Shown: positions 10,000 through 63,637 of the stretch, in pieces
How positions within the stretch are numbered: position 1 is the stretch's first letter
Layout of the letters: each line of letters begins with the position of its first letter
Virus record (IMG/VR): IMGVR_UViG_3300025161_000004
Location: 124,001 to 188,000 of that record
DNA length: 64,000 bases
Direction: 5' to 3' (one strand)
Program-made: the position numbers and the translations under genes
The notes under the pieces: generated by a model
Seen by the model: the letters and a program-made list of their open reading frames with translations, nothing else
Database searches by the model: none
What the model was told of the DNA's origin: nothing

Positions 10000-10017
10000 A
10001 ACCAAACTAAAAGTAAA

Positions 10018-18081: not shown

Positions 18082-20793
18082 TTAAACCTCATCGAAATTT
18101 GCTCCAGAAGGAGTTATTGTAAATGTAATTCCAATGTATTCTACTGCTCTAGTAGGTTTAATTTGGATTTCACCATATAATTCATTTCTATCTCTAGTTT
18201 CTGGTGAATTATTTGAATCATCCATTATTATTCTGAATTCTTGTAATCCTCTTTCTCTCTTAATAGTATCCAATATTGGATTTACTTTAGATAAAAATTC
18301 GTCAATTGTAGTTTGATCATTTTGTTCGAACACCAATCTAATGGCAACGTTAGAGATTAATACCTTTAATTGTAATAATAATCTTCTAACATTTATTCTA
18401 TCTAAAGCAGATTCTCTTACCTGCAATGTCTTTTGTCCGAAAACCGCACTACCGACATCAGTAAAATCAGCAATAGGGTTGATTCTACCTTTATATAGAA
18501 TGTCTCTTGCCTCAATAGATAATTTATATTTAGCTCTTCTTGCATCTATAATACCACGCTGTAAACCAGCAGGTGCGAACCAAGGAAACTTAATATTATC
18601 GGTGAATGCAATTGCCTTACATACTTGACCTGTAGGTGGAATATACACACTTACATTATTGTCGGTATCTAAAATTTTAATCCAAGGAAAGTAGGTTGCA
18701 GTATAACTACTGTCGATATCAACGGTATCCAATAAATCAACAATATCTTCTGCAGCTACAACATCTTGTCTTTCATCTATACCAATTGGAACTGATACAT
18801 CAGGAGTATCTAATATATATAAACTATCTGCACGATCATTTTCTATCATGTCAATCACTTGCTTTACAAGACTAGTATGATCAGCAAAGTTTAAGCAAGG
18901 AGTTGCAAATAAGTTTATTGTGATTTCTTCAGGATTAGCGAAAGTATTGATAGCAGCTTCCCATGCTTGATAATCGTTAGTTGGCGTAACACCATCAGGA
19001 ACGCCATCAAAAGGACCACCTTTTCTGAATAGGTCAGTATTACTTCTTTCACTTCTATGTTCGTCCCATCCATCGAATCCACCAGCAGGAACTAAAGTAA
19101 ACTTTCTTGATTGTGGATTTGAATATGGATTCGAACTATTATTAATATCGGCTAAAGTTTGGAAGTTAGCAGCACCAACCTCAAATTCACCCATTTCGTA
19201 CACACCAGTGGCATCAATATCCATGTGGAAACCTTTTGATTTAGTCAAGTCGTTAGATACTCCAATAAAATTAAACAGATTCTGATTAATTCCAGTACCC
19301 CTTAATGATACACCATCATAACCTCTTTCAGATATACCGAGATATGTTCTATTAATTCTATCATCTGGTAAGTATGATGTTTTATAAAATATCTTTGGTG
19401 CAATACCAGTTGGCCCGAAATTAGGTTGCTTATAACCTTCAAAACCTGCAGGGAATGCATCTTCTGGAGCATCCTCTGCGATTTCAAGCATAATATATTT
19501 GCTCTTCAAATCGTAATCACCATTAGCTGTACCAATTCTGTTACCGACATAACCAGTTTCAGTTTTTCTCATTGTACATCTCTGAAACGTTTCTAAAACT
19601 CTTATGTTATCGTCAGTATCATTAAAATCACGAATTATAACATCAAACTCTTTAGTTACTGGATTGATATTAGCAATAGTAATTTTAATTTCTTTGTTAG
19701 CCGAATTACCATCAGAAATTGAAATACACTTGAAAAGTTTTTCGATTCTATTACCACGCAATTCGGAAACAATCCAAGGTGTCTCAGGAGTCTGATATTG
19801 ATATCTGTAGTTAGTAAACATATCAGATGTTAATGTTAATACTGAACTATTAACACCATACGCTAATGAATCAGCATCTAATTTTTTTATTAAATCAGGG
19901 AATACTGATTCAACATATAATCTTGTATTCTTTCCTTTTGGTTTGTCACCCAATACATTAACAATATAATCTCTCGAATTAGGATTTAGAGATACAACAT
20001 ACGTTTCTGCACTCGTAGAACCTGTAATAGCTGTATTAATTGCTTTTATAGTAAATTGACCAAACAAATTACCAGTACCAGTATTAGTAGCGTTTGCTGA
20101 GATTTCCACTAAGTCGGCTTCAAAATTGGTTACTGGCGCAACACCATCTTCGTCTTTGACGGTAGCTCTTGATCTTAATACAGCAAGAACCATGTTTTCA
20201 TAATTAGGATTAGAAATAGCATTCAAAGTATATGCTGTATAGTTAAGAGTACCACTACCATTACTCAATAACGAAGTAACTTCATAAACATACTTTACAC
20301 CAGTAAAGGTTGTCGGACTTACTTTAGTAAATCCACTAAATATTGTACCAGTTTGTCCGTTACTTGAAATTACTTCACCAAGGTAAGAGAAATTTGTGAA
20401 TGAAACACCTGTTAGAGTATTTGTTGTGCCAGTAGTGATGGTGTCACCACTAACACCAGCACTTAAAGTAATTGCCCAAGCAGTCCCAGCATCATATCCA
20501 GATAACCCTAATACTCTTGTGACATATAATTGTGATGATTCTTCCAAGTATGCATTTGCATAGTAAGGAAGTATATATCTTAAATTACCTGTTTGAAATC
20601 TTTCTACACTTTGAGAACCAAATCTTTCTCTGAACTGACCTTTATCTTGAATGAATGTGGGTTCAAAGGCAGGTCCTTTTTGTGTTTCTCCAACAAGACC
20701 TAAAGTAGTTACACCAACATTTCTAGTTACAAATGATAAATCTCTCTCTCTGAATTTAACCCCAGGTGAGGTAAATATGAAACCATGTGCCAT
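18082..20793 (-). CDS. gp18: Contractile tail sheath protein (T4 gp18-like)
   Basis: SPGVKFRERDLS start; PWFAPAGLQRG, LYKGRINPI, GQKTLQ, RINVRRLL, FEQND C-terminal motifs. Confidence 0.95.
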   Translation of the reverse strand: MAHGFIFTSPGVKFRERDLSFVTRNVGVTTLGLVGETQKGPAFEPTFIQDKGQFRERFGSQSVERFQTGNLRYILPYYANAYLEESSQLYVTRVLGLSGYDAGTAWAITLSAGVSGDTITTGTTNTLTGVSFTNFSYLGEVISSNGQTGTIFSGFTKVSPTTFTGVKYVYEVTSLLSNGSGTLNYTAYTLNAISNPNYENMVLAVLRSRATVKDEDGVAPVTNFEADLVEISANATNTGTGNLFGQFTIKAINTAITGSTSAETYVVSLNPNSRDYIVNVLGDKPKGKNTRLYVESVFPDLIKKLDADSLAYGVNSSVLTLTSDMFTNYRYQYQTPETPWIVSELRGNRIEKLFKCISISDGNSANKEIKITIANINPVTKEFDVIIRDFNDTDDNIRVLETFQRCTMRKTETGYVGNRIGTANGDYDLKSKYIMLEIAEDAPEDAFPAGFEGYKQPNFGPTGIAPKIFYKTSYLPDDRINRTYLGISERGYDGVSLRGTGINQNLFNFIGVSNDLTKSKGFHMDIDATGVYEMGEFEVGAANFQTLADINNSSNPYSNPQSRKFTLVPAGGFDGWDEHRSERSNTDLFRKGGPFDGVPDGVTPTNDYQAWEAAINTFANPEEITINLFATPCLNFADHTSLVKQVIDMIENDRADSLYILDTPDVSVPIGIDERQDVVAAEDIVDLLDTVDIDSSYTATYFPWIKILDTDNNVSVYIPPTGQVCKAIAFTDNIKFPWFAPAGLQRGIIDARRAKYKLSIEARDILYKGRINPIADFTDVGSAVFGQKTLQVRESALDRINVRRLLLQLKVLISNVAIRLVFEQNDQTTIDEFLSKVNPILDTIKRERGLQEFRIIMDDSNNSPETRDRNELYGEIQIKPTRAVEYIGITFTITPSGANFDEV

Positions 20794-27828: not shown

Positions 27829-28120
27829 CGAACAGCATTTATTAAATCAGATTAAATTATTGAAAATGGCTCTTGAGTTTTATGCTGAAGAAGCTAATTA
27901 TGTCAATAATCAAATTTTTAATGATAAAGGATTTATTGCAAGAAACACCCTAGATAGATTATCTATTTTAAATAATGAAATTAGACAATCTCAAGAGTTA
28001 TTCGATAAAATACAGAAAATAAAAACTGATAATAATATCGATGATACTGGTATTAGTGATACGGATTTAATAAATATTTTAGGAAAATTAGATGAATTAA
28101 ATAACAAACTAAATACATGA
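27821..28120 (+). CDS. Hypothetical protein
   Basis: Coupled ORF. Confidence 0.65.
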   Translation: MVDEQHLLNQIKLLKMALEFYAEEANYVNNQIFNDKGFIARNTLDRLSILNNEIRQSQELFDKIQKIKTDNNIDDTGISDTDLINILGKLDELNNKLNT

Positions 28121-29250
28121 AAATAAAACAAAATAATAAAACGTATATACCTAAATTTTCTAAACCTGAAACAAGAGATATTTATTCACATTTTTTTGAT
28201 TCTGATTTCGGAATTTTACAAAAAAATATTATATCGTATTTTAATAATACCTTAAATATTGATTCATTTTCTATTACAGTCGAAAATCTATTGAAGGATG
28301 ATTTATACATAAAACTTAATGAATTGGGTTTTTATTTATTATACAAACACGAAAATCTTAATAGAAATGATAAACAAAACACCACACAAAGTAATTTTGC
28401 AATTGATGATTTTTATTATGGTGATAGTGTTACAGTTTTTGCAAAAGAAAATTATGAAGCAATTTTAAGTATTGAGAGATCAAGTAGGAATAATTTAAAT
28501 GTTACATGCTTCTATATTCAAGAAACAAAAAATATAGAAGAATTAATCAAATTTCTTAGTAAACATCACCGTAAGATAGATAAAAAGGTTCAAATAATAA
28601 CGAGAAGATCGCATGGTTATGAAATACAAGCTATTGATGTAAAAAAAATTGATATTGATTTCGATCTCTATTACAATGATGATTTTAAATATTCTGAATT
28701 GAAAAAAAATATTGAATTAGATGAAAATGGAATCATCATTATGAGCGGTGTACCGGGAAGCGGTAAAAGTTCCCTTATAAAGTACATGATAAGAGATATT
28801 CCAAGAGAATTTTGCTATTTACCACCAAATAATATTGAATTGTTTTCTGATCCTTCTTCACTACCATTTATTATTCAAGAGTTAAATAATAAGATTTTAA
28901 TAATCGAGGATTGTGAAAAATTATTAAGATCAAGAGATGAAGGTGACAATTGGAATATTGCAACAATATTAAATATTAGTGATGGTATTTTAGGAGATTA
29001 TCTTAATTTAAAGATGATTTTAACCATCAATACTACCGAAAAAATAGATGAGGCTTTGTTAAGAAAAGGAAGATTACTATATTCGTATGATTTTAAAAAT
29101 CTGACTGTGGCTAAAGTAAATGCTTTAGCTAAAAAACTTGGAATTGATAAGGAATTTACACAAGAATTACCATTGACTGATCTTTTAAATTATGATAAAG
29201 AAAATAATGCAACTAATTTTGTTAAGAAAAAGAAAAAAATAGGATTTTAA
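28117..29250 (+). CDS. AAA+ ATPase
   Basis: GVPGSGKS Walker A, LIIEDCE Walker B, IDEALLRKGRL SRH, C-terminal KKIGF. Confidence 0.9.
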   Translation: MKIKQNNKTYIPKFSKPETRDIYSHFFDSDFGILQKNIISYFNNTLNIDSFSITVENLLKDDLYIKLNELGFYLLYKHENLNRNDKQNTTQSNFAIDDFYYGDSVTVFAKENYEAILSIERSSRNNLNVTCFYIQETKNIEELIKFLSKHHRKIDKKVQIITRRSHGYEIQAIDVKKIDIDFDLYYNDDFKYSELKKNIELDENGIIIMSGVPGSGKSSLIKYMIRDIPREFCYLPPNNIELFSDPSSLPFIIQELNNKILIIEDCEKLLRSRDEGDNWNIATILNISDGILGDYLNLKMILTINTTEKIDEALLRKGRLLYSYDFKNLTVAKVNALAKKLGIDKEFTQELPLTDLLNYDKENNATNFVKKKKKIGF

Positions 29251-29693
29251 TGTCTATGAATAAAATAAAATTTAAAAAATTATCAACACATGCCGTTTCA
29301 CCTTATAAAGCAAAAAAAGGCGATGCGGGCTTTGATATGACTGCAATTTCAATAGATGAAACCGAAAATTACATTGAGTATGGTACGGGTATTGCCGTTG
29401 AAATACCAGAAAATTATTTAGGAATACTTGTACCAAGAAGTTCAGTTACAAATAAAAATCTTATTTTGAAAAATTCTATTGGAATTATAGATAGTGGATA
29501 TCGTGGTGAACTTAAATTCAGATATTTACGATTGAAAGATGAAACAGGTAATATGAGAAATAATATTTATAATGTTGGTGAAAGATGTGGTCAACTGATA
29601 ATTTTAGAACTTCCATGTTTTGAAATGGAAGAAGTTAATGAATTATCTGATTCTGAAAGAGGGTGTGGTGGATACGGAAGTACGGGAAGTTAG
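29250..29693 (+). CDS. dut: dUTPase (trimeric)
   Basis: DAGFD, PRSS, GIIDSGYRGE, SERGCGGYGSTG motifs. Confidence 0.95.
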   Translation: MSMNKIKFKKLSTHAVSPYKAKKGDAGFDMTAISIDETENYIEYGTGIAVEIPENYLGILVPRSSVTNKNLILKNSIGIIDSGYRGELKFRYLRLKDETGNMRNNIYNVGERCGQLIILELPCFEMEEVNELSDSERGCGGYGSTGS

Positions 29694-29886
29694 AGAATAC
29701 CATAGTAATGGTTTTCTAAAGTCAATTTATTTTCTTAATAATGAAAATAAAAAACATGGCATATATAAAGAATATTGGTTTGATGATGGATCACTTATGC
29801 AAATAAGTTTTTATAATAATGATATTTTAGAAACAAGTATATATTTTTATAAATATGGAAGTAAAACTCAAATCAATTACACCTAA
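29620..29886 (+). CDS. MORN-variant/YwqK-like repeat protein (start uncertain)
   Basis: EYHSNGFLKS...KHGIYKEYWFDDGSLMQISFYNND repeats; overlaps both neighbours. Confidence 0.55.
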   Translation: MKWKKLMNYLILKEGVVDTEVREVREYHSNGFLKSIYFLNNENKKHGIYKEYWFDDGSLMQISFYNNDILETSIYFYKYGSKTQINYT

Positions 29887-30535
29887 TGCAGAATTGAATA
29901 TTGTTGAAATAGCAAGAGTTAGTTCAACAAGAAAAGATAAAACTGAAAAACCAGAACAATTACTTAACTATCTTATAAAGAATAAGCACTGGAGTCCATT
30001 TGAACATAGTTATTTAACTTTTGAAATAATTACATCAAAAGCAATAGGTATTCAATTATTAAGACACAGAAGTTTTACTTTTCAAGAATTGAGTCAACGA
30101 TATGCTATTGTAGATAATATAGAATCGATTGAATTCAGACTTCAAGCAAAAAAGAATAGGCAAAGCAGTACATTTAGTATCGCAAAATTAGATTTCAATG
30201 ATAGCACATTTAAATTATCATTAGAAGCTGAAAATTTTTATCAGGTAGAATATAATGACCTTTTAATGGAAATCGGTAAAAATATTCTTAAAGCTCAAGA
30301 ATTATATAAAAGGGCAATTGAAAATGGAATAGCTAAAGAGTGTGCAAGAATGATATTGCCAATGGCAACTGAAACTAAAATATATATGACTGGTAGTATT
30401 AGATCATGGATTCATTTTTTGGAAATTAGAGATGATGAGCACGCACAAAAAGAAATACAATTGATAGCGAAAGAAATAAAAAGAATATTTACATCTGAAT
30501 GTCCTATTATAAGTAAATCTTTGGGTTGGTGTTAA
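29855..30535 (+). CDS. thyX: Flavin-dependent thymidylate synthase
   Basis: HWSPFEH, RHRSFTFQELSQRY, ARMILP, HAQKEI. Confidence 0.95.
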   Translation: MEVKLKSITPNAELNIVEIARVSSTRKDKTEKPEQLLNYLIKNKHWSPFEHSYLTFEIITSKAIGIQLLRHRSFTFQELSQRYAIVDNIESIEFRLQAKKNRQSSTFSIAKLDFNDSTFKLSLEAENFYQVEYNDLLMEIGKNILKAQELYKRAIENGIAKECARMILPMATETKIYMTGSIRSWIHFLEIRDDEHAQKEIQLIAKEIKRIFTSECPIISKSLGWC

Positions 30536-30546
30536 AAATTTGAATT

Positions 30547-31104
30547 ATGAGAGTAGTAGAAACAGATATACTAGGCTGTTTTATAATATATCCTACTGTA
30601 TTTAACGATTACAGAGGTAGTTTTACAGAATTATTTAATTTAGAGCGATATATTGATATTGGTATTATTGATAGAAATACAAAATTTGTACAAGATAATA
30701 TTTCATTTTCTGTATCTGGTACAATAAGAGGGCTGCACTTCCAAAAAGGAATACATGCACAAGCCAAACTTGTGACATGTCTAATGGGTAGAGTGTTAGA
30801 TGTAATTGTGGATTGTAGAAAAAGTAGCCCTTCATTTGGTAAGGTATTGACGTATGATATTGATTCAGTAGCAAAACAACAAATATATATACCACGTGGT
30901 TGTGCACATGGTTTTGCCGTGTTATCTGATTCAGCATATTTCATGTACAAATGTGATAATTATTATAATAGAGAAAGTGATTCTGGTATTGTCTATAATG
31001 ATCCCGATCTTAAAATAAATTGGTTTGTGGATAATGGACTTCCCTTAATCTCTGAAAAGGATAGAAATTTACCTACATGGAATAATTGTTATAAATTTGA
31101 ATGA
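30547..31104 (+). CDS. rmlC: dTDP-4-dehydrorhamnose 3,5-epimerase
   Basis: DYRGSF, VQDNISFS, IRGLHFQ, QAKLVTC, IPRGCAHGF, YKCDNYY, ISEKD. Confidence 0.95.
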   Translation: MRVVETDILGCFIIYPTVFNDYRGSFTELFNLERYIDIGIIDRNTKFVQDNISFSVSGTIRGLHFQKGIHAQAKLVTCLMGRVLDVIVDCRKSSPSFGKVLTYDIDSVAKQQIYIPRGCAHGFAVLSDSAYFMYKCDNYYNRESDSGIVYNDPDLKINWFVDNGLPLISEKDRNLPTWNNCYKFE

Positions 31105-31340
31105 ATGTTTTCATAGCATGTATATTAATATTATCCATTACAGTACTTCTATTATCGATTGCTATTCTTTTAGTTATAAAGAAAACAATCTATTTGTCAA
31201 GGAAGGAAAAGGATTTTATTGAATTTGCTATTGATATGTATATTGACTATGCCAAAGATTTGGATATAAATTCAGAAACAGAACATGATAGAATTGTTGT
31301 AGAACTAAAAAAAATTAAAGACAAACTAAATAAAGAATAA
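31101..31340 (+). CDS. Small membrane protein
   Basis: N-terminal hydrophobic helix. Confidence 0.7.
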   Translation: MNVFIACILILSITVLLLSIAILLVIKKTIYLSRKEKDFIEFAIDMYIDYAKDLDINSETEHDRIVVELKKIKDKLNKE

Positions 31341-31341
31341 A

Positions 31342-32094
31342 ATGAATGAAAAATTAAAATATGTTATTACAGAACAAAATTATGATGCATATACTAAAGA
31401 AGATCAATTGGTTTGGAGTACTCTTTATTCTAAATTATATGTTTATTTTTTATATAAGGATGCTATCGTTACAGAATTTTACGATGGATTGTTAAAATTA
31501 AAAATCGGTAGTGACAGGATTCCAAAATTTGATGAAGTTAATAAAATACTCGCTCAAGAAACAGGATTTGAAATTGTCCCTGTAAATGGAATTGTAGATG
31601 ACGATATATTTTTTGCTTTTTTAAAAAACAAACAATTTCCAGTTACAACTTGGATAAGAAAGCCAGATCAGTTAAATTATATCGAACAACCTGATATGTT
31701 TCATGATTTATTTGGTCATGTACCTTTCTTGGTTAACAAGAAATATTGTGATTTTTTGATAAGATTAGGTAGACATGCGGAGGCAATATTTAATTCTAAC
31801 GATAAGGAAAGGCAGTATAAGATGAGTAGATTGTATTGGTATACAATTGAATTTGGATTGGTAAAAGACAAAATTGGAGATATATTAATATATGGTTCAG
31901 GTATAATATCTTCATTTGGTGAAACAAATAAAGTTTACGATTTATCAAGATCGAAATATAGCGATCATGAAATTTGTGAATTTAATTTAAATATTCTTAA
32001 TAGAAGATTTGTGAAAAACGAATTTCAAGAATTTTATGCGTATATTAGTGATTCATTAGATTCATTAATGGATATTCCAGTAGAATCGATATGA
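31342..32094 (+). CDS. phhA: Phenylalanine-4-hydroxylase (pterin-dependent aromatic amino acid hydroxylase)
   Basis: EQPDMFHDLFGHVP and LYWYTIEFGL give the 2-His-1-Glu iron triad; YGSGIISSFGE also present. Confidence 0.9.
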   Translation: MNEKLKYVITEQNYDAYTKEDQLVWSTLYSKLYVYFLYKDAIVTEFYDGLLKLKIGSDRIPKFDEVNKILAQETGFEIVPVNGIVDDDIFFAFLKNKQFPVTTWIRKPDQLNYIEQPDMFHDLFGHVPFLVNKKYCDFLIRLGRHAEAIFNSNDKERQYKMSRLYWYTIEFGLVKDKIGDILIYGSGIISSFGETNKVYDLSRSKYSDHEICEFNLNILNRRFVKNEFQEFYAYISDSLDSLMDIPVESI

Positions 32095-32637
32095 TTATTT
32101 AGTTTCGTTAAGAAATGGTAAGACATCTTCCTTAACTGGAATTGCAGTTATTTTTTTCCAATACGGTTTGAAATTGGCAATCGTTTGTGATGTTACATCA
32201 GTAACATTCTGAGCATTCTCAACTTCAAAATATCTTGGTCTCTCGCCTGACATGTTATATTCTATAATATCACCTCTAAGTATTTCAATATTTTTCTCTG
32301 CCAATTCTTGTAGATATACATTAACTACTATCGAAGTAATATCATCTCTAACAGCACCACCATCAGTATAATTTTTCTGTTCGGTATCGTTAATTTCAAC
32401 TAAGGCATGTAGTTCTACTGGTGGAAAAAATTTCTTATCTGATGGTTTTGCTTGCCCATATAATTTATGGACTTTAGATTCAATAACGTTTATTTTATGG
32501 ATTTTAACCTTATAGTTAACATCACTTTTAAGATACTCCCTACCAATACTAATATCTAGATTAAAACTATTCTCACTCATGAATAGTCCATAACGTTCAT
32601 GTTCTAAATTAATTATGTCAACTTTTTTCTTACTCAT
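32095..32637 (-). CDS. Neck/head-completion protein, T4 gp14-like
   Basis: Follows the gp13-like gene; HKLYGQA...F.PPVEL...VYLQEL...GDII pattern. Confidence 0.7.
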   Translation of the reverse strand: MSKKKVDIINLEHERYGLFMSENSFNLDISIGREYLKSDVNYKVKIHKINVIESKVHKLYGQAKPSDKKFFPPVELHALVEINDTEQKNYTDGGAVRDDITSIVVNVYLQELAEKNIEILRGDIIEYNMSGERPRYFEVENAQNVTDVTSQTIANFKPYWKKITAIPVKEDVLPFLNETK

Positions 32638-32638
32638 A

Positions 32639-33757
32639 TTATATTGCCATTATAGGAGTACGTGGTGGTTGATATCCTCTTTCTTTATTAACATTTTCAG
32701 CTATAGCTGCTCTATCAGCGGTCATTTGAACCAGCGATAATTTGTTCAGTGTGTCAAAAATCTTCTCACGTGTTTCGGTTTTAAGTTTTTCACCTTCATC
32801 TAAAAGATGTCTATAATCCATAGTTAGTGCCTTATTAGTACTACCAATTTCTCCAGAAAAGAATCCACGAATACCACCAATAACAATTTTAGTTCTTGCT
32901 ATGAAAAGATCACGAACTTGCTGTTTCGCTACATCATTTAATTTATCCCATCTCAAGATTTGAGTAGGAGCATCACTTGGTAATTTAATTATATCTTCAT
33001 TCTCCTCTAAACATTTATCTCTTCCAGAATCTTTTGTATCATAATAGAAATACCACACTTTTCTACCTTCATAATGTTTACCCCAACGACCAGCAATTTC
33101 ATTTCGTTTACCGGGAATAGGGTAAAGATGCAATAGCTTTGTACCATCAGCCTGACCAGTAATTCTATATGTCAGTGTTGATTGTAATACTCTTTGTTTC
33201 ATTCTTCTATCTTGTGCAGATAAAAGAATAGAATATGTTGGTTGAACATACATAGCAGGTCTACCCATATACGACCATCCAAATTGTCCCGCAGTCCAGT
33301 TAGTTAAGGCAAAAGGGTCATTTATACCTTGGTCAATTGATGGTGGAGTTTCCCACAAAACTTCATTAATTTCTCTATTAGCTGGTATTACATAATGTTG
33401 TGTATCTGCTGAAATCGTAATGAAATCTCTTTTTAATTCCCATTTATCACCAGCAGGAGCATTTGTACCTAAACCTACTTGTTTAGAATAGGCATAAGTA
33501 AAACTTCTCATGAAATCATTCGATTTTGTGCTATATGCAGTTAAAAAATCGGCACTATTAAGATCTAAACCCTGTAAAGATACCCATTGTTGTTGAATTA
33601 ACCACTCATTAACATAACTACTATAATCTTCTATAGAGAGTTCTAAAAATGAGTCTAACATCTCATCTGTGACTTGAATAGGTCTAATCGGATACCCCAA
33701 TTCATGTTTAACTTTTAAATAAAGTTTTTCTTTATCCGTTTTGCTTATTAGTGCCAT
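32639..33757 (-). CDS. Neck protein, T4 gp13-like
   Basis: VKHELGYPIRPIQVTDEMLD...LLDEGEKLK pattern; late motif at 33780-33787. Confidence 0.75.
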   Translation of the reverse strand: MALISKTDKEKLYLKVKHELGYPIRPIQVTDEMLDSFLELSIEDYSSYVNEWLIQQQWVSLQGLDLNSADFLTAYSTKSNDFMRSFTYAYSKQVGLGTNAPAGDKWELKRDFITISADTQHYVIPANREINEVLWETPPSIDQGINDPFALTNWTAGQFGWSYMGRPAMYVQPTYSILLSAQDRRMKQRVLQSTLTYRITGQADGTKLLHLYPIPGKRNEIAGRWGKHYEGRKVWYFYYDTKDSGRDKCLEENEDIIKLPSDAPTQILRWDKLNDVAKQQVRDLFIARTKIVIGGIRGFFSGEIGSTNKALTMDYRHLLDEGEKLKTETREKIFDTLNKLSLVQMTADRAAIAENVNKERGYQPPRTPIMAI

Positions 33758-33794: not shown

Positions 33795-34319
33795 ATGACA
33801 TTTAAGATTGAATATCAAATACGACTAAATGATAATGGTAGACCCTATATCTATCTTAATCCAGAATTTCAAGATATACCTGCACATAGATTTTTTGTAT
33901 TGGAAATGACCAGATACATACTCTTTGATGTTATAGATAGAAATATGAGAAAACCTGATAACCAAAAGATATCTAATCAGGCGTTAAATATATTACAAAA
34001 TACAGCTATTTCAATTGGAAATATCAGTGACGAAATTGCAAAGATTATTAAATCATCAATGATCAATAATGTACCAATAAATAAAGTTTATAATGGTACT
34101 AAGTTTGATATCGTAGTAGATAGTAAATCAGATTTAAAGAATGTTTTAAAAGCATTTGTATTTAATAGTAAAATATATATAAGAAAAAACAATATCAAAG
34201 TACTCGTATTAGATGAAAAGAAAGTCTATCAGTTAGATTGGAAAAACATAAAAAAACCTAAATGGATACTATTAGATTCTTCAGAAAGGAATGAAAAAGA
34301 TTCAAAGAATGAAGCGTAA
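33795..34319 (+). CDS. Hypothetical protein
   Basis: Start moved from 33741 to 33795 on promoter position. Confidence 0.7.
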   Translation: MTFKIEYQIRLNDNGRPYIYLNPEFQDIPAHRFFVLEMTRYILFDVIDRNMRKPDNQKISNQALNILQNTAISIGNISDEIAKIIKSSMINNVPINKVYNGTKFDIVVDSKSDLKNVLKAFVFNSKIYIRKNNIKVLVLDEKKVYQLDWKNIKKPKWILLDSSERNEKDSKNEA

Positions 34320-35871
34320 AAAAAATAATAAAATGGAAAAGGTTTTTGAAAAAACAATAAACTGTAAATCCCAAGAATTACCAGTATTTCCATATCCACC
34401 AACAAAGGAACAAGAAGTTATTTTTGATGCAGCACTAAATAGTAATGATAATCTTCTTATTGAAGCGAGAGCAGGCGCATCAAAAACAACAACTATTATT
34501 CATATCGCAAAATTACTACCTAAAAATAAGAGTAAAATATTTCTTGCTTTTAATAGACACATTAAAGAAGAATTAACTCTTAAATTGCCTGAAGATGTGA
34601 AATGTTACACATCACATGGTTTAGGTATGATGGCTATTAAAAGAAAATATGGTGATAAAATCACCATGGATGAATTCAAGATAAGTAAAATCATAGAAAA
34701 GAAATCCGAAACTTGGAATCTTGAAAGAGATTTTACTATAGATCAAATTCCCGATTATAAATCTTCTATTCGTAAGATGGTTGATTTATGTAGATTAACC
34801 ATGACATTTGATAAGAAATATGTTGAATATATTGCAGAGAAATATGATATAGTGTATTCTGAACCTTTAGATATTAAAAGAGTTTTATCTGTATTGGATA
34901 GTGCCATGGAAGATAGAACTACATTTGATTTTATTGATATGATATTTTTACCTGCTGTAGATAAAACAATATGGGTACAACAGTTCGATTATATTTTTAT
35001 TGACGAAGCACAAGATATGTCAAGAGCGCAGCAAGAACTCGTAAAAAGATTAGTAAAACGTGATATGTTTAATAATTATGTTGGAAGAACTATAGTTGTC
35101 GGTGATGAAAAACAATCAATATATTCATTTGCTGGTTCAGATCACAAATCATTTGCATGGTTTAGAAAATTTAATAATCCAAAAATATTACCATTAACAA
35201 CCACATTTCGTTGTGCGAAAAAAATTGTCGAACACGCACAACAATTAGTTCCAGATATTATGCCAAGAGAAAATGCTCCTGATGGTGTGGTAATGAAAGG
35301 TAGCGTATACGATGCAAAAGATGGTGATTTTGTCTTGTGTAGAACTACAGCACCATTAGTCGTATTGTTTTTTGAACTTTTAGCACAAGGTAAAAAAGTG
35401 ACGATAAAAGGTAGCGATATTGGATTATCATTACTTGATATGATAAAAAAATATAAAAGTCTATCCACCATGAGTGCTGGATTATATAATGAACTTATTC
35501 AAATGCAAGGTATTTTAAGAAAGAAAGGTATAACTAAATTTCATGAGTGTAGTGCGTATGTTAATTTTATTGATAAGGTTGAAGTTTTAAACTTCATGGC
35601 AAAGCAAGTTAATGATATTGAAGAATTAAGAAAAAAAATTCAATCGATTTTTACTGAAAATGTTAGTGGTATTGTATTGAGTACGATTCATAAAGCAAAG
35701 GGGTTAGAAGCCGAAAGAGTCTTTATTATTAGACCAGATCAATTACCCATGAGAGTATCTAAGGCATGGATGGCAGAGCAAGAAAAAAATCTAATATATG
35801 TTGCAATGACTCGTGCTAAAAATGAATTGATTTATGATTATGAATGGACTAACGTAAAAGATGATGAGTAG
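34291..35871 (+). CDS. uvrD: UvrD/Rep-family SF1 helicase
   Basis: ARAGASKTT, IFIDEAQD, VGDEKQSIYSFAG, STIHKAKGLE, YVAMTRAK. Confidence 0.9.
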   Translation: MKKIQRMKRKKNNKMEKVFEKTINCKSQELPVFPYPPTKEQEVIFDAALNSNDNLLIEARAGASKTTTIIHIAKLLPKNKSKIFLAFNRHIKEELTLKLPEDVKCYTSHGLGMMAIKRKYGDKITMDEFKISKIIEKKSETWNLERDFTIDQIPDYKSSIRKMVDLCRLTMTFDKKYVEYIAEKYDIVYSEPLDIKRVLSVLDSAMEDRTTFDFIDMIFLPAVDKTIWVQQFDYIFIDEAQDMSRAQQELVKRLVKRDMFNNYVGRTIVVGDEKQSIYSFAGSDHKSFAWFRKFNNPKILPLTTTFRCAKKIVEHAQQLVPDIMPRENAPDGVVMKGSVYDAKDGDFVLCRTTAPLVVLFFELLAQGKKVTIKGSDIGLSLLDMIKKYKSLSTMSAGLYNELIQMQGILRKKGITKFHECSAYVNFIDKVEVLNFMAKQVNDIEELRKKIQSIFTENVSGIVLSTIHKAKGLEAERVFIIRPDQLPMRVSKAWMAEQEKNLIYVAMTRAKNELIYDYEWTNVKDDE

Positions 35872-37120: not shown

Positions 37121-38776
37121 CTACACTAAATCGCCGATACCAAACACTTCAAGACCATCGCAAAGAATTTTACCGTAGTAACGGTTTAAGATCATCTTCT
37201 TAGCGTAACGAGTCATAATACCACGAATAGGTTTGAAGTCAAATGGATTGTACATTACTGGTGTTAACTGCATTGGTATATATGGTGCGTAGATGTAACC
37301 AGATTCCAAGATTGACGAACCCTTATGACCAATCAAAACAGTGTTTGGTGGTGAATAAGGATCACGATATACTTGGTAACGGTTTTGTAATACACCAATC
37401 TTTTCTATACCCATGTTATACTTATCTTGCTCAGGAGCGGCATTAGATACATGGAAGTATTCTAAATCGTCAAACACAGCAGACACTTCAGGTGATACAA
37501 CAACCCATGTAGCACCACCTCTTAAAGTTGACTTATGGATTTGAGCAGAGATTTGGTTAATCTTGGTCATCAAGGTCTGATTCCAGTCCTTTTGTGTACC
37601 ATAATAAACGTTGGTTTGCTTACGCAATCCGTTGTAATCCCAGCGTAATGTCCAAGCCGCACCTCTACGCAAATCTCTAAGAACTTCACGATCGATTTCA
37701 GCTGCCATTTGCTCCGACAACAATGCTGTCAATTCAGCTTCAGCGTCAATATTATGGAATGCGCTTACGTCTTGAGCAAGTTCAGGAGTCCACTGTGATC
37801 TCATCTTGCGAGTTTCAACAGCAACAGTAACTTCATCTAATTCGAAAGTAACTTCTGCCATTTCCGAATCCTCTTCAAGATCAGAGTATACTCTATAAGT
37901 AACAACGAAATCGGTTGTTGTTCCAGCAGTTAAACCTTTATAGCCATCTTGCCCAGGATATGATAAGTCTAAAGTTAATACAAGTTGTCCTTGTTTATTA
38001 ACAATAGCCTGACCATATTTTTGTACTTTGACACTATAAGGAATAGGTTCACCAGCAGCAATTGAAGCATCTTGGAATGGTGCAGGAGCATTTAAATCAT
38101 CTACAGCGGTCACTTTAAGTGATGCTAAGAATGATTCAGTATCCATAGGAACACCAGAAGGACCTACAAGTTTACCATTTGAGATTGAGAAACCAGATAC
38201 AGTTAAAGTAGCAACTCTGTCACCATCAGTATAAGATGGATCAAGATAAGTTGTACCACTAACAACTGTAAAACGTCCCTTGCTTCTATCAAATAATGAT
38301 GTACCTTCATCACCATACTCAGTAGCATAGAATGCATCATACAATGATCTTTGTTCGTACTGAGTTCTTTGAGATGGTGTCAAAGTAGCTGCATTCGAAT
38401 AAGCACCATCAGGTGAAGTGTGCTCGTTAGCAGAACCTCTAACAGAAATCTTAGGATTAATGTAATATAATTTGCCAATTGGCAAGTTCAAAGCCTGAAC
38501 AGATACGATGTCGTTTGCTAACAATTTAGCAAATACACGTCTGATAACAGGGAATGCAACTGTTTCGAATTGTCCTGAAGATGCTGAATCTGTTGATTCG
38601 TTAATCATATAAGATAACTGATTCTCAAATAATTGAGCACAGTTCTCTTTTATGTGACCCTCAAGCCCTTCTAAAAGTCCAATCTTTTCCCATCTGTTGG
38701 TAGTAATTTCTCTTTGTTCTCTTAATTGCTTAAGACCGATATTACCAACTTCTGCACTTTCAATTAAAAATCCCAT
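37121..38776 (-). CDS. gp23: Major capsid protein (T4 gp23-like)
   Basis: FPVIRRVF...VSVQAL, AEAELTALLSEQMAAEIDRE, GYIYAPYIP, FKPIRGIMTRYAK. Confidence 0.95.
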   Translation of the reverse strand: MGFLIESAEVGNIGLKQLREQREITTNRWEKIGLLEGLEGHIKENCAQLFENQLSYMINESTDSASSGQFETVAFPVIRRVFAKLLANDIVSVQALNLPIGKLYYINPKISVRGSANEHTSPDGAYSNAATLTPSQRTQYEQRSLYDAFYATEYGDEGTSLFDRSKGRFTVVSGTTYLDPSYTDGDRVATLTVSGFSISNGKLVGPSGVPMDTESFLASLKVTAVDDLNAPAPFQDASIAAGEPIPYSVKVQKYGQAIVNKQGQLVLTLDLSYPGQDGYKGLTAGTTTDFVVTYRVYSDLEEDSEMAEVTFELDEVTVAVETRKMRSQWTPELAQDVSAFHNIDAEAELTALLSEQMAAEIDREVLRDLRRGAAWTLRWDYNGLRKQTNVYYGTQKDWNQTLMTKINQISAQIHKSTLRGGATWVVVSPEVSAVFDDLEYFHVSNAAPEQDKYNMGIEKIGVLQNRYQVYRDPYSPPNTVLIGHKGSSILESGYIYAPYIPMQLTPVMYNPFDFKPIRGIMTRYAKKMILNRYYGKILCDGLEVFGIGDLV

Positions 38777-40315: not shown

Positions 40316-41023
40316 TTATTTTATTAGAAACTTATTCAATACATTTAATACATTATCATACTCATTTATTGAATTCTTATTAGAAACATGACTTTCACCA
40401 AGTCCATTAAATGATGTCATTTCAGGAAAAAGATATGCACCGGGTGTACTCGGTGATGCAACTAAATCAAAACAAATTAATTCGAAATCGTCTTGAACAA
40501 TATTATCACCATTAACCTGTTTAAGTGTTCCAATACCTCTACTTGAAATACCCAATCTAATACCTCTTTTTAGATATTCGACTATCTTGTCACCAATCAT
40601 ACACACAATTCCATTACGCATATATGCTGGAGATGTGATAATCTCTATTTGACCAAATAACACGTTCTGATTTTCGCCACTACCCCACCAAGTCTTTTTA
40701 ATTAGATGTGATACATTATTTAAAGACACCACAGATGAATCTGGATGGTCTGCTTCAGATATAGCAGAAGAATTTTCAACCATATTTTTTACATAATTAT
40801 CAACCTCACGCATTAATACCTCTTTAGGGTATATTCTACCGTTTTTATTTTTTACACCCCATTTTTGAAGTATACAATTAACTAAAACAGGTTTATCAGG
40901 ATCAAATTTAAATTTGGTTGATTCTGTGACAAGTGTGGGGTTCAATTCCAAATCAATATAACCAGCATCATGCTCAATAAGAATTCCGTAACCAGTCTCG
41001 TTTTTCCCTAAAATTTTAGACAT
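40316..41023 (-). CDS. gp21: Prohead protease (T4 gp21-like)
   Basis: KNKNGRIYP, EADHP (His), GISSRGIG (Ser), FDLVASPSTPGA. Confidence 0.95.
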   Translation of the reverse strand: MSKILGKNETGYGILIEHDAGYIDLELNPTLVTESTKFKFDPDKPVLVNCILQKWGVKNKNGRIYPKEVLMREVDNYVKNMVENSSAISEADHPDSSVVSLNNVSHLIKKTWWGSGENQNVLFGQIEIITSPAYMRNGIVCMIGDKIVEYLKRGIRLGISSRGIGTLKQVNGDNIVQDDFELICFDLVASPSTPGAYLFPEMTSFNGLGESHVSNKNSINEYDNVLNVLNKFLIK

Positions 41024-48673: not shown

Positions 48674-50773
48674 TTAATTCTCATCATAATCTAATCCAAT
48701 ATCATCTAAATCAAGTTCCTTAATTTCTGAATCACTGATGTCGTTTTTCTTATCTGGATCAGTATATGATGGTATTTTAGGATATTTTTTCGAATTAATT
48801 TTATTGGATTTTTCTAATAATGAATCAATTTCACTAATCATTCTAAAAGCATTATTTCTAAGTTCATTAGATTTTTTAGATATATCTTCTGTAAGAAGTT
48901 CATCTTTTTCCCTATTTTCAACTGATTTATCTTTAGAATTAAACCTACTGTCAATAAATTTGTTAAATTCATTTTCATCTAAAATAGGTGATCCTGTTTT
49001 TCTAAATTTTTTTCTACTATTTTTTTCATTTAGTATTGGTTTATAATTATGTGTTGATTCTGCTGGTATTGCAGCACCTCCTGCGGTAGGCGCAGCAGTG
49101 GGTGCACCTCCAACAGTGCCCGTCATAGGTTCACCTTCTATTGGTGGTAATTCAGTCATATCACCCAATTTAGATGGGTCACTACCAAGTACGTTATCTA
49201 CCATTTGCTGGGTAGTACCAGTAGCAGCACCTTCAGAAGGCACACTTTCACTAGTACCATATCTTTTATCAAGGTCAGTGAATAAACCGCTCTGTTTAAT
49301 AACAACTGCAGAGTCAACTAACTCTTGACCAACAACTCTTTCCATTCTTTGTTTTTTCAAATCATCTGCAATTTCAGCTTCTGACCATTCAAACACAAAT
49401 TGTTTTGCATTAGTATGTGACATTGGCGCAATACCGCCTTCAGGTGCTGTTGTTAATAAATTATATAGATTAGCTTTTTGTGTCCAAAGATCAGTTTTTA
49501 ATAAATCTTGTTGTGTTGATGGGTTACTCAATCTTAACACAAAATCATTAACGTTTTCTTTTTTATATCCTCTTAGATATAAATGTATTATTGCAATTTT
49601 GTTTAATTCTTGAATAAGTGCTTGTTGAATTCTATTAATCTTTTTTGCAAAACGAACATCAGATTGTGCCATGTTTTTTCCTTCACCCGCACTTGCCTGA
49701 TAACCTAAGAATGTTCTTGGTACTCCTAATCCAGTAAATAAATTATCACGTAAATATTCGATATCGGCAATCTGATCTAGGTTCTGAGCACCGGGAAGCG
49801 TATCGATACCTGTCTGTACATTACCATTTCTTACTGGTAAAAAGAAATCTTCGTCATTACCTAAAATATTAAAACGATAATCTATATGACCGCTATCTGG
49901 ATATACTTGAGAAGTTTTTTTAAATTTAGTAGCGACTTTATAGATATATGATTCAATATCATCCTCATCAATATTACCTACATCTATTTTAAATACTCTT
50001 TTTTCGCCTGCACGAACAATACGATAAGTTAACATGGCATCTTCTGCCATAACTAATTGTCTGAATACTCTTCTTATTTTATTTAAAATTGAGGATCCAT
50101 ATGGTAAATATTTATCATCCCCTAATAATCTAAAATGTGCAATTTCGAGTAGGTTGAATTCAGTTGATGTCTCTCTTTGTTTAAACTTAACAATCAATTT
50201 ACCGTTCTCAATTTTTTCAATACGCTCCATTTCATAGTTAACTAATTGTTTTGCATATATTACGCCTGCATTTTTTTCGGCAAAAAGATAGACGAAATTA
50301 TCACCATATTTGCACATATTTCGTGTCCAAAATGGTAGATTGATATTTATGTTCAGTCTGTTGTAAAATAAATCTTCGAGTTCTTCTTTAATTCTTGGTT
50401 TGTCTGAATATATATTCAGCATTTTACCGTTACTACCAACAACAGTGGCTTCTTCCATGAATAAATCCAGTGCGCTAGCAATAAGAGGATAATATTCCAT
50501 ACCTTCATAATCAAGGTATGCAGGAAGTCTATTAGCCTCATACTGCATAGCCTTCTGGAATCCATGATCTGTTGTTTTGTAGAACTTTTTCCAGAGAGCG
50601 TCTCTTTGTTGAATTTCTAGTGCTTTTTTCTTTATATCTTCAGGCGAATCTCCCCTAATAATGATTTTTTTCGGCTCATTTTTAGATGCTTGACTACCTC
50701 TATCTGCAAAACCATCCAGATTTAAAATAGAATTTAAATTCTGATATATAGTTCTTTTCTTATTGTCTGCCAT
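48674..50773 (-). CDS. gp20: Portal protein (T4 gp20-like)
   Basis: DYEGMEYYP, KYGDNF, HFRL, EDAMLTYRIVRAGEKRVFKIDVGN, TLPGAQNL, LGVP. Confidence 0.95.
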   Translation of the reverse strand: MADNKKRTIYQNLNSILNLDGFADRGSQASKNEPKKIIIRGDSPEDIKKKALEIQQRDALWKKFYKTTDHGFQKAMQYEANRLPAYLDYEGMEYYPLIASALDLFMEEATVVGSNGKMLNIYSDKPRIKEELEDLFYNRLNININLPFWTRNMCKYGDNFVYLFAEKNAGVIYAKQLVNYEMERIEKIENGKLIVKFKQRETSTEFNLLEIAHFRLLGDDKYLPYGSSILNKIRRVFRQLVMAEDAMLTYRIVRAGEKRVFKIDVGNIDEDDIESYIYKVATKFKKTSQVYPDSGHIDYRFNILGNDEDFFLPVRNGNVQTGIDTLPGAQNLDQIADIEYLRDNLFTGLGVPRTFLGYQASAGEGKNMAQSDVRFAKKINRIQQALIQELNKIAIIHLYLRGYKKENVNDFVLRLSNPSTQQDLLKTDLWTQKANLYNLLTTAPEGGIAPMSHTNAKQFVFEWSEAEIADDLKKQRMERVVGQELVDSAVVIKQSGLFTDLDKRYGTSESVPSEGAATGTTQQMVDNVLGSDPSKLGDMTELPPIEGEPMTGTVGGAPTAAPTAGGAAIPAESTHNYKPILNEKNSRKKFRKTGSPILDENEFNKFIDSRFNSKDKSVENREKDELLTEDISKKSNELRNNAFRMISEIDSLLEKSNKINSKKYPKIPSYTDPDKKNDISDSEIKELDLDDIGLDYDEN

Positions 50774-63629: not shown

Positions 63630-63637
63630 ATATAAAG

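What the first reader, a model, noticed from the sequence alone, without database searches (positions are those of the whole stretch)
31342..32094. Intact phenylalanine-4-hydroxylase encoded by a phage
Seen: full iron triad (FHDLFGH; TIEFGL) and family motifs, in an operon with dut, thyX and rmlC, flanked by core virion genes, so it is clearly viral. Established: PhhA converts Phe to Tyr using O2, Fe(II) and a tetrahydropterin recycled by PhhB; it can feed the homogentisate/pyomelanin pathway. It is not a standard phage gene. Inference: it supplies Tyr for Tyr-rich structural proteins, alters host pigment or redox state, or has shifted substrate. No phhB is visible in this window.
Basis: partly seen in the sequence, partly recalled or inferred. 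Interest (0 to 1): 0.7.

Follow-up and report, generated by a model that had tools for sequence, protein, structure and literature searches.

The report
Jumbo-phage phenylalanine hydroxylase without cofactor recycler
A very large T4-like phage really does carry an intact, conserved copy of the bacterial enzyme that turns phenylalanine into tyrosine; it belongs to a rare phage-only branch of that enzyme family and must borrow its pterin cofactor and recycling enzymes from the host.

Summary
Window 31342-32094 (+) is an intact 250-aa pterin-dependent aromatic amino acid hydroxylase. Pfam Biopterin_H scores E 6.6e-35 and C. violaceum PAH E 1e-49. The AF2 model has pLDDT 96.8 and TM 0.83 to 3TK2/1LTU. 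The Fe triad H121/H126/E170 and the pterin and substrate residues are conserved.

It is truly viral. The window is part of a 247 kb IMG/VR contig with T4-type sheath, capsid, protease, portal and terminase genes. Independent metagenomes bridge both gene junctions, and the gene sits in the same slot in five or more related jumbo-phage genomes.

It belongs to a monophyletic clade (support 100/99) in which every member with readable context is phage-like. No sampled bacterial genome is more than 45% identical. dN/dS is about 0.13-0.26. The gene is accessory: three complete relatives lack it.

None of the PhhA-positive phage genomes, two of them complete, encodes PCD/PhhB, and no pterin-synthesis or reductase gene was found where searched. 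All 22 bacterial PhhA carriers tested have PCD.

Best reading: an auxiliary metabolic gene that makes Tyr from Phe using host cofactor. The physiological benefit is unproven, and the "Tyr-rich structural proteins" idea gets no specific support. This is a new member of a known kind, of moderate interest.

The parts
31342..32094 (+). PhhA-type phenylalanine-4-hydroxylase, 250 aa. It has the catalytic domain only, with no ACT or tetramerisation domains.
   Evidence: Pfam Biopterin_H E 6.6e-35. cPAH 1LTU E 1e-49. AF2 pLDDT 96.8. Foldseek TM 0.83, rmsd 2.1-2.4 to cPAH. H121/H126/E170, F90, R106, D122, Y165, W166 and S190/S191 are conserved.
31101..31340 (+). 79-aa ORF with an N-terminal hydrophobic helix. 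It lies upstream of PhhA (1-nt gap here) in the T4-like relatives that carry PhhA.
   Evidence: Homologs lie upstream of PhhA in L002, L003, L004, L005, L089 and L093. Homologs also persist beside the gp14-position gene in relatives that have no PhhA there (L096, L099, L100, L102, L115), so it is not a PhhA-specific partner.
30547..31104 (+). RmlC-like dTDP-4-dehydrorhamnose 3,5-epimerase (cupin)
   Evidence: Pfam dTDP_sugar_isom E 6e-62. The nearest named relatives are Flavobacteriaceae at 50-58% identity.
29855..30535 (+). ThyX, flavin-dependent thymidylate synthase
   Evidence: Pfam Thy1 E 1.8e-47. 71% nucleotide identity to Flavobacterium phage FPSV-D18.
29250..29693 (+). dUTPase
   Evidence: Pfam dUTPase E 4.9e-16.
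28117..29250 (+). AAA-family ATPase, first large gene of the co-directional block
   Evidence: Pfam AAA E 3.5e-9.
32095..32637 (-). Conserved phage protein, convergent with PhhA and abutting it. It sits where T4 gp14 would sit, next to the gp13-like gene.
   Evidence: 42-91% identical in related phages. No Pfam, PHROG or PDB match. The gp14 assignment rests on position only.
32639..33757 (-). T4 gp13-like neck protein
   Evidence: Atlas feature search 0.98 to clusters carrying PF26809 Phage_T4_gp13. 60-91% identical in close relatives. No direct Pfam or PHROG hit.
34291..35871 (+). UvrD-like helicase
   Evidence: Pfam UvrD-helicase E 6e-22 and UvrD_C.
37121..38776 (-). T4 gp23-type major head protein
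   Evidence: phrog_138 E 1.4e-67. Relatives carry PF07068 Gp23 in the same position.
40316..41023 (-). Prohead (head maturation) protease
   Evidence: phrog_207 E 4e-41.
18082..20793 (-). Tail sheath
   Evidence: phrog_23 E 5e-64.
48674..50773 (-). Portal protein
   Evidence: phrog_213 E 5e-53.
50840..52891 (-). Terminase large subunit
   Evidence: phrog_2 E 2e-32.

Best explanation
The gene is an auxiliary metabolic gene of a T4-like jumbo phage whose host is probably a member of the Bacteroidota. It encodes a compact, catalytic-domain-only, non-haem-iron, tetrahydropterin-dependent phenylalanine 4-hydroxylase. It is transcribed with a co-directional block of nucleotide-metabolism genes (AAA ATPase, dUTPase, ThyX, RmlC, a small ORF, then PhhA). 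In the infected cell it would use O2, Fe(II) and a host-made tetrahydropterin to convert L-Phe to L-Tyr. The phage encodes no pterin-4a-carbinolamine dehydratase, and no GTP cyclohydrolase I, PTPS, DHFR or SDR-type reductase was found where searched. Cofactor supply and regeneration must therefore come from the host. The likely benefit is to shift the aromatic amino-acid pool toward Tyr in one step, bypassing the Tyr-inhibited host route while host gene expression is failing, for a phage proteome with about as much Tyr as Phe. Shown here: enzyme family, intact active site, viral location, conservation under purifying selection, a phage-specific clade, accessory distribution, and absence of cofactor genes. 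Inferred: activity, substrate, host-supplied cofactor, and the physiological benefit.
For: Identity: Pfam, PDB sequence match, AF2 model pLDDT 96.8 and TM 0.83 to cPAH. H121 and H126 are invariant and E170 at least 90% kept in 79 homologs, together with F90, R106, D122, Y165, W166 and S190/S191.

Viral location: the window is G000:124001-188000 of a 246,768-bp viral record, with hallmark genes around the gene. In hot-spring metagenome X3, contigs at 99% identity or better bridge both junctions. In metagenome X6 one bridges the downstream junction. No joints were seen.

Conservation: PhhA occupies the same slot in L002, L003, L004, L005/L008, L089 and L093 at 46-76% identity. pN is far below pS, with dN/dS 0.13-0.26.

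Clade: 50 sequences form one clade in the quick tree (SH-aLRT 99), and the 17 sampled form one clade in the careful tree (100/99). All 11 members with readable context are phage-like. The best of 598 or more bacterial genome hits is 45% identical.

Cofactor: Pterin_4a is absent from G000, G001-G005 and G016, of which G005 and G016 are 100% complete. folE and PTPS are absent from G000. DHFR and SDR are absent from G000, G001, G004 and G005. By contrast, 22 of 22 PhhA-bearing bacteria have Pterin_4a.

Demand: phage Tyr/Phe ratios are 0.86-1.09, against 0.74 in sampled Bacteroidota loci.

Host hints: no SD motif enrichment (2.7% vs 3.9%), RmlC closest to Flavobacteriaceae, and thyX 71% nucleotide identity to a Flavobacterium phage.
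Against: There are no biochemical data. The only expression evidence is one 158-nt contig in a run labelled RNA, which could be DNA carry-over. Tyr content does not separate PhhA-positive from PhhA-negative relatives; PhhA-negative G009 is the most Tyr-rich at 5.5%. Complete close relatives do without the gene, so the benefit is conditional. The host is not identified, so host PCD and pterin supply are assumed. Without PCD the enzyme would turn over slowly and build up inhibitory 7-pterins (established knowledge of PAH/PCD). My absence calls rest on Pfam profile searches of six-frame translations, and a non-homologous replacement would be missed.
Confidence: 0.7

Rival explanations
1. The enzyme is the same, but its purpose is catabolic or protective. 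The phage PhhA would push host Phe into the Tyr, 4-hydroxyphenylpyruvate and homogentisate route. That would yield fumarate and acetoacetate for energy, or pyomelanin, which changes iron and redox state or protects against light, during infection.
For: In bacteria PhhA is commonly the first step of Phe catabolism and feeds pyomelanin in Legionella and Aeromonas (PMC3458870, PMC4368426, found). The gene is accessory and patchy, as expected for a niche-dependent metabolic booster. The phage also carries other energy or cofactor modules, such as NAD+ salvage.
Against: No downstream gene (aminotransferase, HPPD, HGD) was seen near PhhA in any phage locus, and the genomes were not searched for them specifically. 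Pigment formation is slow compared with a lytic cycle.
Confidence: 0.15
2. The phage clade has shifted its substrate, regiochemistry or cofactor. Examples are Trp 5-hydroxylation, Tyr 3-hydroxylation, or Phe 3-hydroxylation to meta-tyrosine. Another is use of a folate-type cofactor, which would link it to the neighbouring thymidylate synthase as the plant 10-formyl-THF-dependent PAH does.
For: The phage clade sits on a long stem (0.6-0.76 substitutions per site). It lacks the usual PCD partner. A thymidylate synthase lies within about 2 kb of PhhA in two unrelated gene arrangements: ThyX or ThyA in the T4-like slot, and ThyA in L092.
Against: The pocket residues that define Phe hydroxylases are retained: R106, Y165, W166 (Trp as in PAH, not Phe as in TPH), S190/S191 and F90. 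The mapping of their roles comes from my own knowledge of cPAH and human PAH structures. The model superposes on Phe-bound cPAH at TM 0.83. Adjacency to nucleotide genes is also what a shared expression class would give. The L090/L091/L094 arrangement has no thymidylate synthase nearby.
Confidence: 0.1
3. The gene is not a working phage gene. It would be either a mis-assembled host fragment or a recently captured passenger that is decaying.
For: The contig is a metagenomic assembly, linear, with a 79% completeness estimate. The gene is missing from several relatives.
Against: Junction-spanning contigs occur in independent samples at 99% identity or better with even depth. GC is flat at about 0.28 across the region. 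Synteny is conserved across phages whose PhhA genes differ by 24-54%. Every copy has an intact frame and active site. dN/dS is 0.13-0.26. The clade is monophyletic with no bacterial member.
Confidence: 0.02

Closest known systems
Bacterial monomeric phenylalanine-4-hydroxylase (PhhA), e.g. Chromobacterium violaceum cPAH (PDB 1LTU/1LTV/1LTZ/3TK2), Colwellia psychrerythraea PAH (2V27), Legionella pneumophila PAH (4BPT)
   Same: Same fold (TM 0.83, 0.82 and 0.78) and 37-39% identity to cPAH. It keeps the 2-His-1-carboxylate triad and the pterin-stacking Phe, substrate-carboxylate Arg, Tyr-Trp pair and Ser-Ser motif. It has the catalytic domain only, with no regulatory or tetramerisation domains.
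   Different: It is shorter at both ends: 250 aa against 297 for cPAH, aligning to cPAH 31-253. It is encoded by a phage and belongs to a separate clade with no sampled bacterial member. It is not accompanied by a PCD/PhhB gene anywhere in the genome, whereas 22 of 22 bacterial carriers have one.
Bacteroidota (Cytophagales/Chitinophagales) PhhA, e.g. Fulvivirga sediminis, Hymenobacter busanensis, Algoriphagus spp.
   Same: These are the closest named cellular sequences, at 41-45% identity, with a similar short length of 240-265 aa. The likely host phylum is the same.
   Different: They form their own well-supported clade (99/96). The phage clade is not nested inside it. The branching order among phage, Bacteroidota and Pseudomonadota clades is weakly supported at 92/49, so no donor can be named.
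Classical phage auxiliary metabolic genes in T4-like and jumbo phages (e.g. cyanophage psbA/talC, KVP40-type NAD+ salvage)
   Same: It is a host-type metabolic enzyme embedded among phage genes. It is patchily distributed among relatives, kept under purifying selection, and relies on the rest of the host pathway. This genome also carries an NAD+ salvage module.
   Different: The step affected is aromatic amino-acid interconversion with a pterin cofactor. I found no such phage gene in PHROGs v4, INPHARED or BFVD, nor in four full-text literature searches.
A second, distant AAAH type on other viral contigs (L006, L007, L207-L211)
   Same: These also belong to the Biopterin_H family and also sit on viral contigs. 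L006 sits beside tail sheath and tube genes.
   Different: They are only 27-39% identical and carry eukaryote-like motifs (CTQYIRH, IHELLGH). They branch far outside the clade (stem 1.3-2.2), which points to an independent acquisition.

Membership tests
Pterin-dependent aromatic amino acid hydroxylase (Pfam PF00351 Biopterin_H; bacterial PhhA, EC 1.14.16.1) | Catalytic-domain fold of the family | tested here: met
   Pfam 121 bits against a cut-off of 22.7. phmmer E 1e-49 to cPAH. AF2 pLDDT 96.8. Foldseek probability 1.00 and TM 0.83.
Pterin-dependent aromatic amino acid hydroxylase (Pfam PF00351 Biopterin_H; bacterial PhhA, EC 1.14.16.1) | 2-His-1-carboxylate iron triad (H-x4-H ... E) | tested here: met
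   H121, H126 and E170 align to cPAH H138, H143 and E184. All three are invariant in the 7 viral copies. In 79 homologs the two His are invariant and E170 is kept in at least 90%.
Pterin-dependent aromatic amino acid hydroxylase (Pfam PF00351 Biopterin_H; bacterial PhhA, EC 1.14.16.1) | Pterin-binding residues: the stacking Phe and the acidic residue after the first His | tested here: met
   F90 aligns to cPAH F107 and D122 to cPAH D139. Both are kept in at least 90% of homologs. Their roles are assigned from my own knowledge of the cPAH and human PAH structures.
Pterin-dependent aromatic amino acid hydroxylase (Pfam PF00351 Biopterin_H; bacterial PhhA, EC 1.14.16.1) | Phe-type substrate pocket: Arg binding the carboxylate, Tyr-Trp before the Glu ligand, and a Ser-Ser motif | tested here: met
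   R106 and W166 are invariant. Y165 and S190 are kept in at least 90% of homologs, and S191 is invariant. Trp at position 166 matches PAH rather than the Phe found in tryptophan hydroxylases (my own knowledge).
Pterin-dependent aromatic amino acid hydroxylase (Pfam PF00351 Biopterin_H; bacterial PhhA, EC 1.14.16.1) | Catalysis of Phe + O2 + tetrahydropterin to Tyr + 4a-carbinolamine | not testable with these tools
   This needs an enzyme assay or complementation.
Bacterial phh system (PhhA with PhhB/PCD recycling) | A pterin-4a-carbinolamine dehydratase (PF01329) in the same genome | tested here: not met
   None of G000, G001-G005 and G016 has a match, and G005 and G016 are 100% complete. By contrast, 22 of 22 PhhA-bearing bacteria do. 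Small co-varying unknowns g114 and g247 do not resemble PCD.
Bacterial phh system (PhhA with PhhB/PCD recycling) | Own pterin synthesis or reduction (GTP cyclohydrolase I, PTPS, DHFR, SDR-type reductase) | tested here: not met
   PF01227 and PF01242 are absent from G000. PF00186 and PF13561 are absent from G000, G001, G004 and G005. FolE2 (PF02649) was not searched.
Phage auxiliary metabolic gene | Lies inside a bona fide phage genome, between phage genes, and is not an assembly artefact | tested here: met
   Hallmark genes lie on both sides. Independent samples bridge the junctions. Synteny holds in six or more related phage contigs.
Phage auxiliary metabolic gene | Maintained by selection in the viral lineage | tested here: met
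   dN/dS is 0.13-0.26, though dS is saturated so the ratio is rough. Every copy has an intact active site. The clade is monophyletic.
Phage auxiliary metabolic gene | Expressed during infection | tested here: inconclusive
   Only one identical 158-nt contig (31440-31597) turned up, in a run labelled RNA. DNA carry-over is not excluded.

The most novel reading that the evidence does not exclude
The phage-only PAH clade is not simply a Tyr supplier. Freed from its PCD partner and repeatedly found beside thymidylate synthases, it may use a different reduced cofactor such as a folate, as plant PAH does. Alternatively it may make a different hydroxylated aromatic product that the phage needs for takeover, for modifying a phage component, or for counter-defence. 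Either would be a new role for this enzyme family in viruses.
Probability: 0.1. Interest if true: 0.75.

Novelty: new member of a known kind. Interest (0 to 1): 0.45.

Why it matters
Aromatic amino-acid hydroxylases are textbook cellular enzymes, but I found no record of them in phages. There is no PHROG family, no match in about 50,700 deposited phage genomes, no fold match among UniProt viral proteins, and no paper in four full-text searches. Here the gene defines a coherent, selected, phage-restricted clade spread over at least two gene arrangements in related jumbo phages and one in an unrelated phage-like contig. The samples come from sediment, hot-spring and soil.

If the enzyme is active, phage reprogramming of host metabolism extends to amino-acid interconversion and to pterin cofactor use. 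It would also be a natural test of how a PAH works when its dedicated recycling enzyme is supplied only in trans. In practical terms, these are compact PAHs of 231-260 aa (the 250-aa window copy modelled with high confidence) that could interest enzyme engineers. The finding is solid but incremental, because jumbo phages are already known to collect host-type metabolic genes.

Tried and rejected
1. Chimeric assembly or host insertion is rejected. Runs X1 and X2, the likely source samples, laid nothing because of the tool's filter, so support comes from X3, X4, X5 and X6 only.

2. The 79-aa upstream ORF as a PhhA-specific partner or membrane anchor is rejected. Its homologs persist in the same slot in relatives with no PhhA there, including G016, where PhhA lies about 160 kb away. 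I therefore did not run complex prediction.

3. A hidden PCD, or pterin genes next to PhhA in relatives, was not found. The extra ORFs are thymidylate synthases, homing endonucleases (GIY-YIG, HNH), a cytidylyltransferase, a SLOG protein and unknowns.

4. I compared proteomes of PhhA-positive (G000, G005, G016) and PhhA-negative (G009, G010) genomes to find a co-varying recycler. The co-varying genes are an NAD+ salvage module, a patatin-like lipase, dUTPase and small viral unknowns. None relates to pterin, and with only 2-3 genomes against 2 the association is weak.

5. The Tyr-richness hypothesis finds no difference between PhhA-positive and PhhA-negative phages, and structural proteins are not Tyr-enriched. 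My crude ORF caller gave unreliable composition for high-GC Pseudomonadota loci, so I ignored that row.

6. The promoter and terminator scan was not above shuffled expectation and is uninformative.

7. A donor for the phage clade is unresolved: the sister relation has 92/49 support.

8. Alternative genetic code: a tRNA with a CUA anticodon exists outside the window, but TAG behaves like an ordinary stop, so table 11 was kept throughout.

Full report
**1. Observation**

Window 31342-32094 (+) is one uninterrupted ORF of 250 codons. Its ATG sits one base after the TAA of the preceding ORF. Its TGA directly abuts the stop of a convergent gene.

- Pfam assigns it to Biopterin_H (E 6.6e-35, 121 bits; cut-off 22.7).
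- The best solved relative is Chromobacterium violaceum phenylalanine hydroxylase (1LTU and 3TK2, E 1e-49, aligned over residues 12-245). Next come the Colwellia and Legionella PAHs, then eukaryotic TH, PAH and TPH catalytic domains.
- Counting along the printed alignment, H121, H126 and E170 fall on the cPAH iron ligands H138, H143 and E184.
- F90 falls on F107, R106 on R123, D122 on D139, and Y165/W166 on Y179/W180.
- In a 79-sequence alignment F99, R106, P117, D118, F120, H121, H126, P128, W166, G172, G185, S191 and Q229 are invariant. F90, D122, Y165, E170 and S190 are kept in at least 90%.
- An AlphaFold2 model built on that alignment has mean pLDDT 96.8 and pTM 0.92. It superposes on Phe-bound cPAH with TM 0.83 and rmsd 2.3 Å.

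The protein covers the catalytic core only. It has no ACT domain and no tetramerisation helix.

**2. Is it really in a phage?**

The window is bases 124001-188000 of a 246,768-bp IMG/VR record, linear, with estimated completeness 79%. PHROG searches identify these genes:

- tail sheath (18082-20793)
- gp23-type major head protein (37121-38776)
- prohead protease (40316-41023)
- portal (48674-50773)
- large terminase (50840-52891)

The gene just downstream on the opposite strand (32639-33757) resembles T4 neck protein gp13 by protein-language-model features (0.98). It has no direct Pfam or PHROG hit.

The capsid protein's best database relatives are uncultured huge phages of 484-595 kb, Rhodothermus phage RM378 and a Microcystis phage, at 27-40% identity. 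This is a distant T4-like jumbo myovirus. GC is flat at about 0.26-0.34 across the window with no step at the gene.

- In an independent hot-spring metagenome (X3), contigs at 99% identity or better span 31247-31778 and 31944-33598. Those are both junctions of the gene. Depth is even and there are no joints.
- A further metagenome (X6) has a contig spanning 31952-32398.
- Soil and other samples hold parts of the region.

**3. Conservation and distribution**

The block from g177 through the UvrD helicase is syntenic in several records, all with gp23 nearby:

- IMG/VR contigs L002 (PhhA 76% identical)
- L003 (51%)
- L004 (51-52%)
- L005/L008 (46%)
- an ENA contig of 234 kb (L089)
- a Logan contig of 72 kb (L093)

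Neighbouring proteins diverge in parallel. The gp13-like protein is 67-91% identical and the helicase 47-88%.

For PhhA gene pairs, pN is far below pS, giving dN/dS 0.13-0.26. dS exceeds 1, so the ratio is only approximate.

A second arrangement places PhhA after an RNA ligase. It occurs in G016 (362,603 bp, direct terminal repeats, 100% complete) and in L091 and L094. These phages share other proteins with the window's genome at 50-66% identity. G016 keeps the gp13, gp14-position and 79-aa ORF slot without PhhA (L102).

A third context (L092) has UvsX, a phage-type NusG and a polymerase exonuclease subunit.

PhhA is accessory. It is absent from complete relatives G009 (266 kb), G010 (372 kb) and G013 (363 kb), and from several fragments. 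A profile scan of about 2.9 million IMG/VR contigs found only 12 loci with any PAH-family gene.

**4. Phylogeny**

In a 132-row tree the window's protein falls in a clade of 50 (SH-aLRT 99, stem 0.6). That clade contains all eight phage-context rows known at that point plus 42 unnamed metagenomic proteins, and no named bacterium. Bacteroidota (37 rows) and Pseudomonadota (37 rows) form separate supported clades.

A careful 50-row tree recovers the phage clade at 100/99, and in all 200 bootstrap trees, with stem 0.76. Its position relative to the bacterial clades is weak (92/49), so no donor can be named.

The best 80 of at least 598 hits in 185,579 species-representative genomes reach only 45% identity (Fulvivirga, Hymenobacter, Pontibacter and other Cytophagales). 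Clade members are 46-77% identical to the query. Eleven clade members have readable contexts, and all are phage-like. Most of the other members sit on short contigs and remain unverified.

Other viral contigs (L006, L007, L207-L211) carry a different, eukaryote-like AAAH. That points to at least one more, independent acquisition.

**5. Cofactor logic**

PAH chemistry oxidises a tetrahydropterin to a 4a-carbinolamine. PCD (PhhB) dehydrates that product, and an NAD(P)H-dependent reductase then re-reduces it (established biochemistry).

- Profile searches find no Pterin_4a in G000, G001-G005 or G016, two of which are complete genomes.
- G000 has no GTP cyclohydrolase I or PTPS.
- G000, G001, G004 and G005 have no DHFR or SDR-type reductase.
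- Every one of 22 PhhA-bearing bacterial genomes tested has a Pterin_4a gene above Pfam's cut-off.
- Genes flanking PhhA in relatives are thymidylate synthases, homing endonucleases and unknowns, not pterin genes.
- Genes that co-vary with PhhA across five genomes are an NAD+ salvage module (NAMPT, NMNAT-Nudix, Prs-like, NrtR-like), a patatin-like lipase and small viral unknowns. None of these resembles PCD.

The phage enzyme therefore has to run on host cofactor and host recycling.

**6. Host**

The host is not identified directly. Three weak, concordant hints point to Bacteroidota:

- SD-like motifs upstream of genes are not enriched (2.7% against 3.9% background). From my own knowledge, this is typical of that phylum and its phages.
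- The named relatives nearest to RmlC are almost all Flavobacteriaceae.
- thyX shares 71% nucleotide identity with Flavobacterium phage FPSV-D18.

**7. Function**

The enzyme identity is secure. The benefit to the phage is inferred. The phage proteome has about as much Tyr as Phe (5.0% and 4.8%; Y/F 0.86-1.09 in five related phages), against Y/F 0.74 in sampled Bacteroidota loci. A one-step Phe-to-Tyr shunt could therefore relieve a Tyr shortfall.

Relatives without PhhA are equally Tyr-rich, and capsid, sheath and portal are not Tyr-enriched.

Feeding the homogentisate route or pyomelanin remains possible. So does a changed substrate or cofactor, although the conserved pocket argues against a changed substrate.

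Expression evidence is limited to one 158-nt identical contig in an RNA-labelled run.

**8. Novelty**

The gene has no PHROG family, no tblastn match in INPHARED and no BFVD fold match at E ≤ 0.001. No paper linking PAH with phages turned up in four full-text searches and two targeted reads of jumbo-phage surveys.

It is a new viral member of a well-known enzyme family: a new AMG type, not a new mechanism. Interest is moderate, at 0.45.

Noticed in passing
G000:C1:230500-230572 (outside the window): ARAGORN labels this tRNA 'Pyl' because it has a CUA (amber-reading) anticodon. It is one of 36 tRNAs, and none of those found reads Tyr or Lys. TAG still ends 40 of 304 crude ORFs, and read-through extensions are no longer than for TGA, so no genome-wide recoding is evident. 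Three TAG-ending ORFs would extend by 157-224 aa.
   Followed up: partly
G000:C1:206302-211879 (outside the window; locus L197:3303-8880): An NAD+ salvage or reconstitution module: a Nudix-containing NMNAT-like protein, NAMPT, a PRPP-synthetase-like protein and an NrtR-like Nudix-wHTH regulator. Its non-NAMPT parts occur in PhhA-positive G005 and G016 but not in PhhA-negative G009 and G010. With only 2 genomes against 2, this may be coincidence.
   Followed up: partly
window 29250-31104 and loci L002:6082-7182, L004:6017-7207, L005:5578-6762 and 9548-10357: The slot between dUTPase and PhhA is a recombination hotspot. It holds ThyX here, a longer ThyX-like ORF in L002, and ThyA with a GIY-YIG-like insertion in L004. 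L005 has HNH and GIY-YIG/I-TevI-like endonuclease ORFs.
   Followed up: partly
L006:1816-2613, L007:7887-8708, L207-L211: Other viral contigs carry a second, very distant AAAH type with eukaryote-like motifs (CTQYIRH, IHELLGH). In L006 it lies beside tail sheath and tube genes. This is probably an independent capture of the family by phages.
   Followed up: partly
whole contig G000 (window included): Gene starts show no Shine-Dalgarno signal (2.7% with a GGAG/GAGG/AGGA core, against 3.9% background). The upstream regions are 83% A+T.
   Followed up: yes
window 63555-63934 (-): A tRNA cluster (Gln-CUG, His, Gln-UUG, Pro) at the window's end, continuing beyond it.
   Followed up: no
G000:C1:29256-30239 (-) (locus L198:757-1740): A patatin-like phospholipase gene. 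It is shared with PhhA-positive relatives G005 and G016 and was not detected in G009 or G010.
   Followed up: no
window 29620-29886 (+): An 88-aa ORF overlaps the 3' end of dUTPase and the 5' end of ThyX in another frame. I did not assess whether it is real.
   Followed up: no
protein P0272: The third-closest RmlC homolog (65% identity) is labelled as a Richelia (cyanobacterial) MAG protein but sits on a 7.6 kb contig. It may be a phage fragment binned into a MAG.
   Followed up: no
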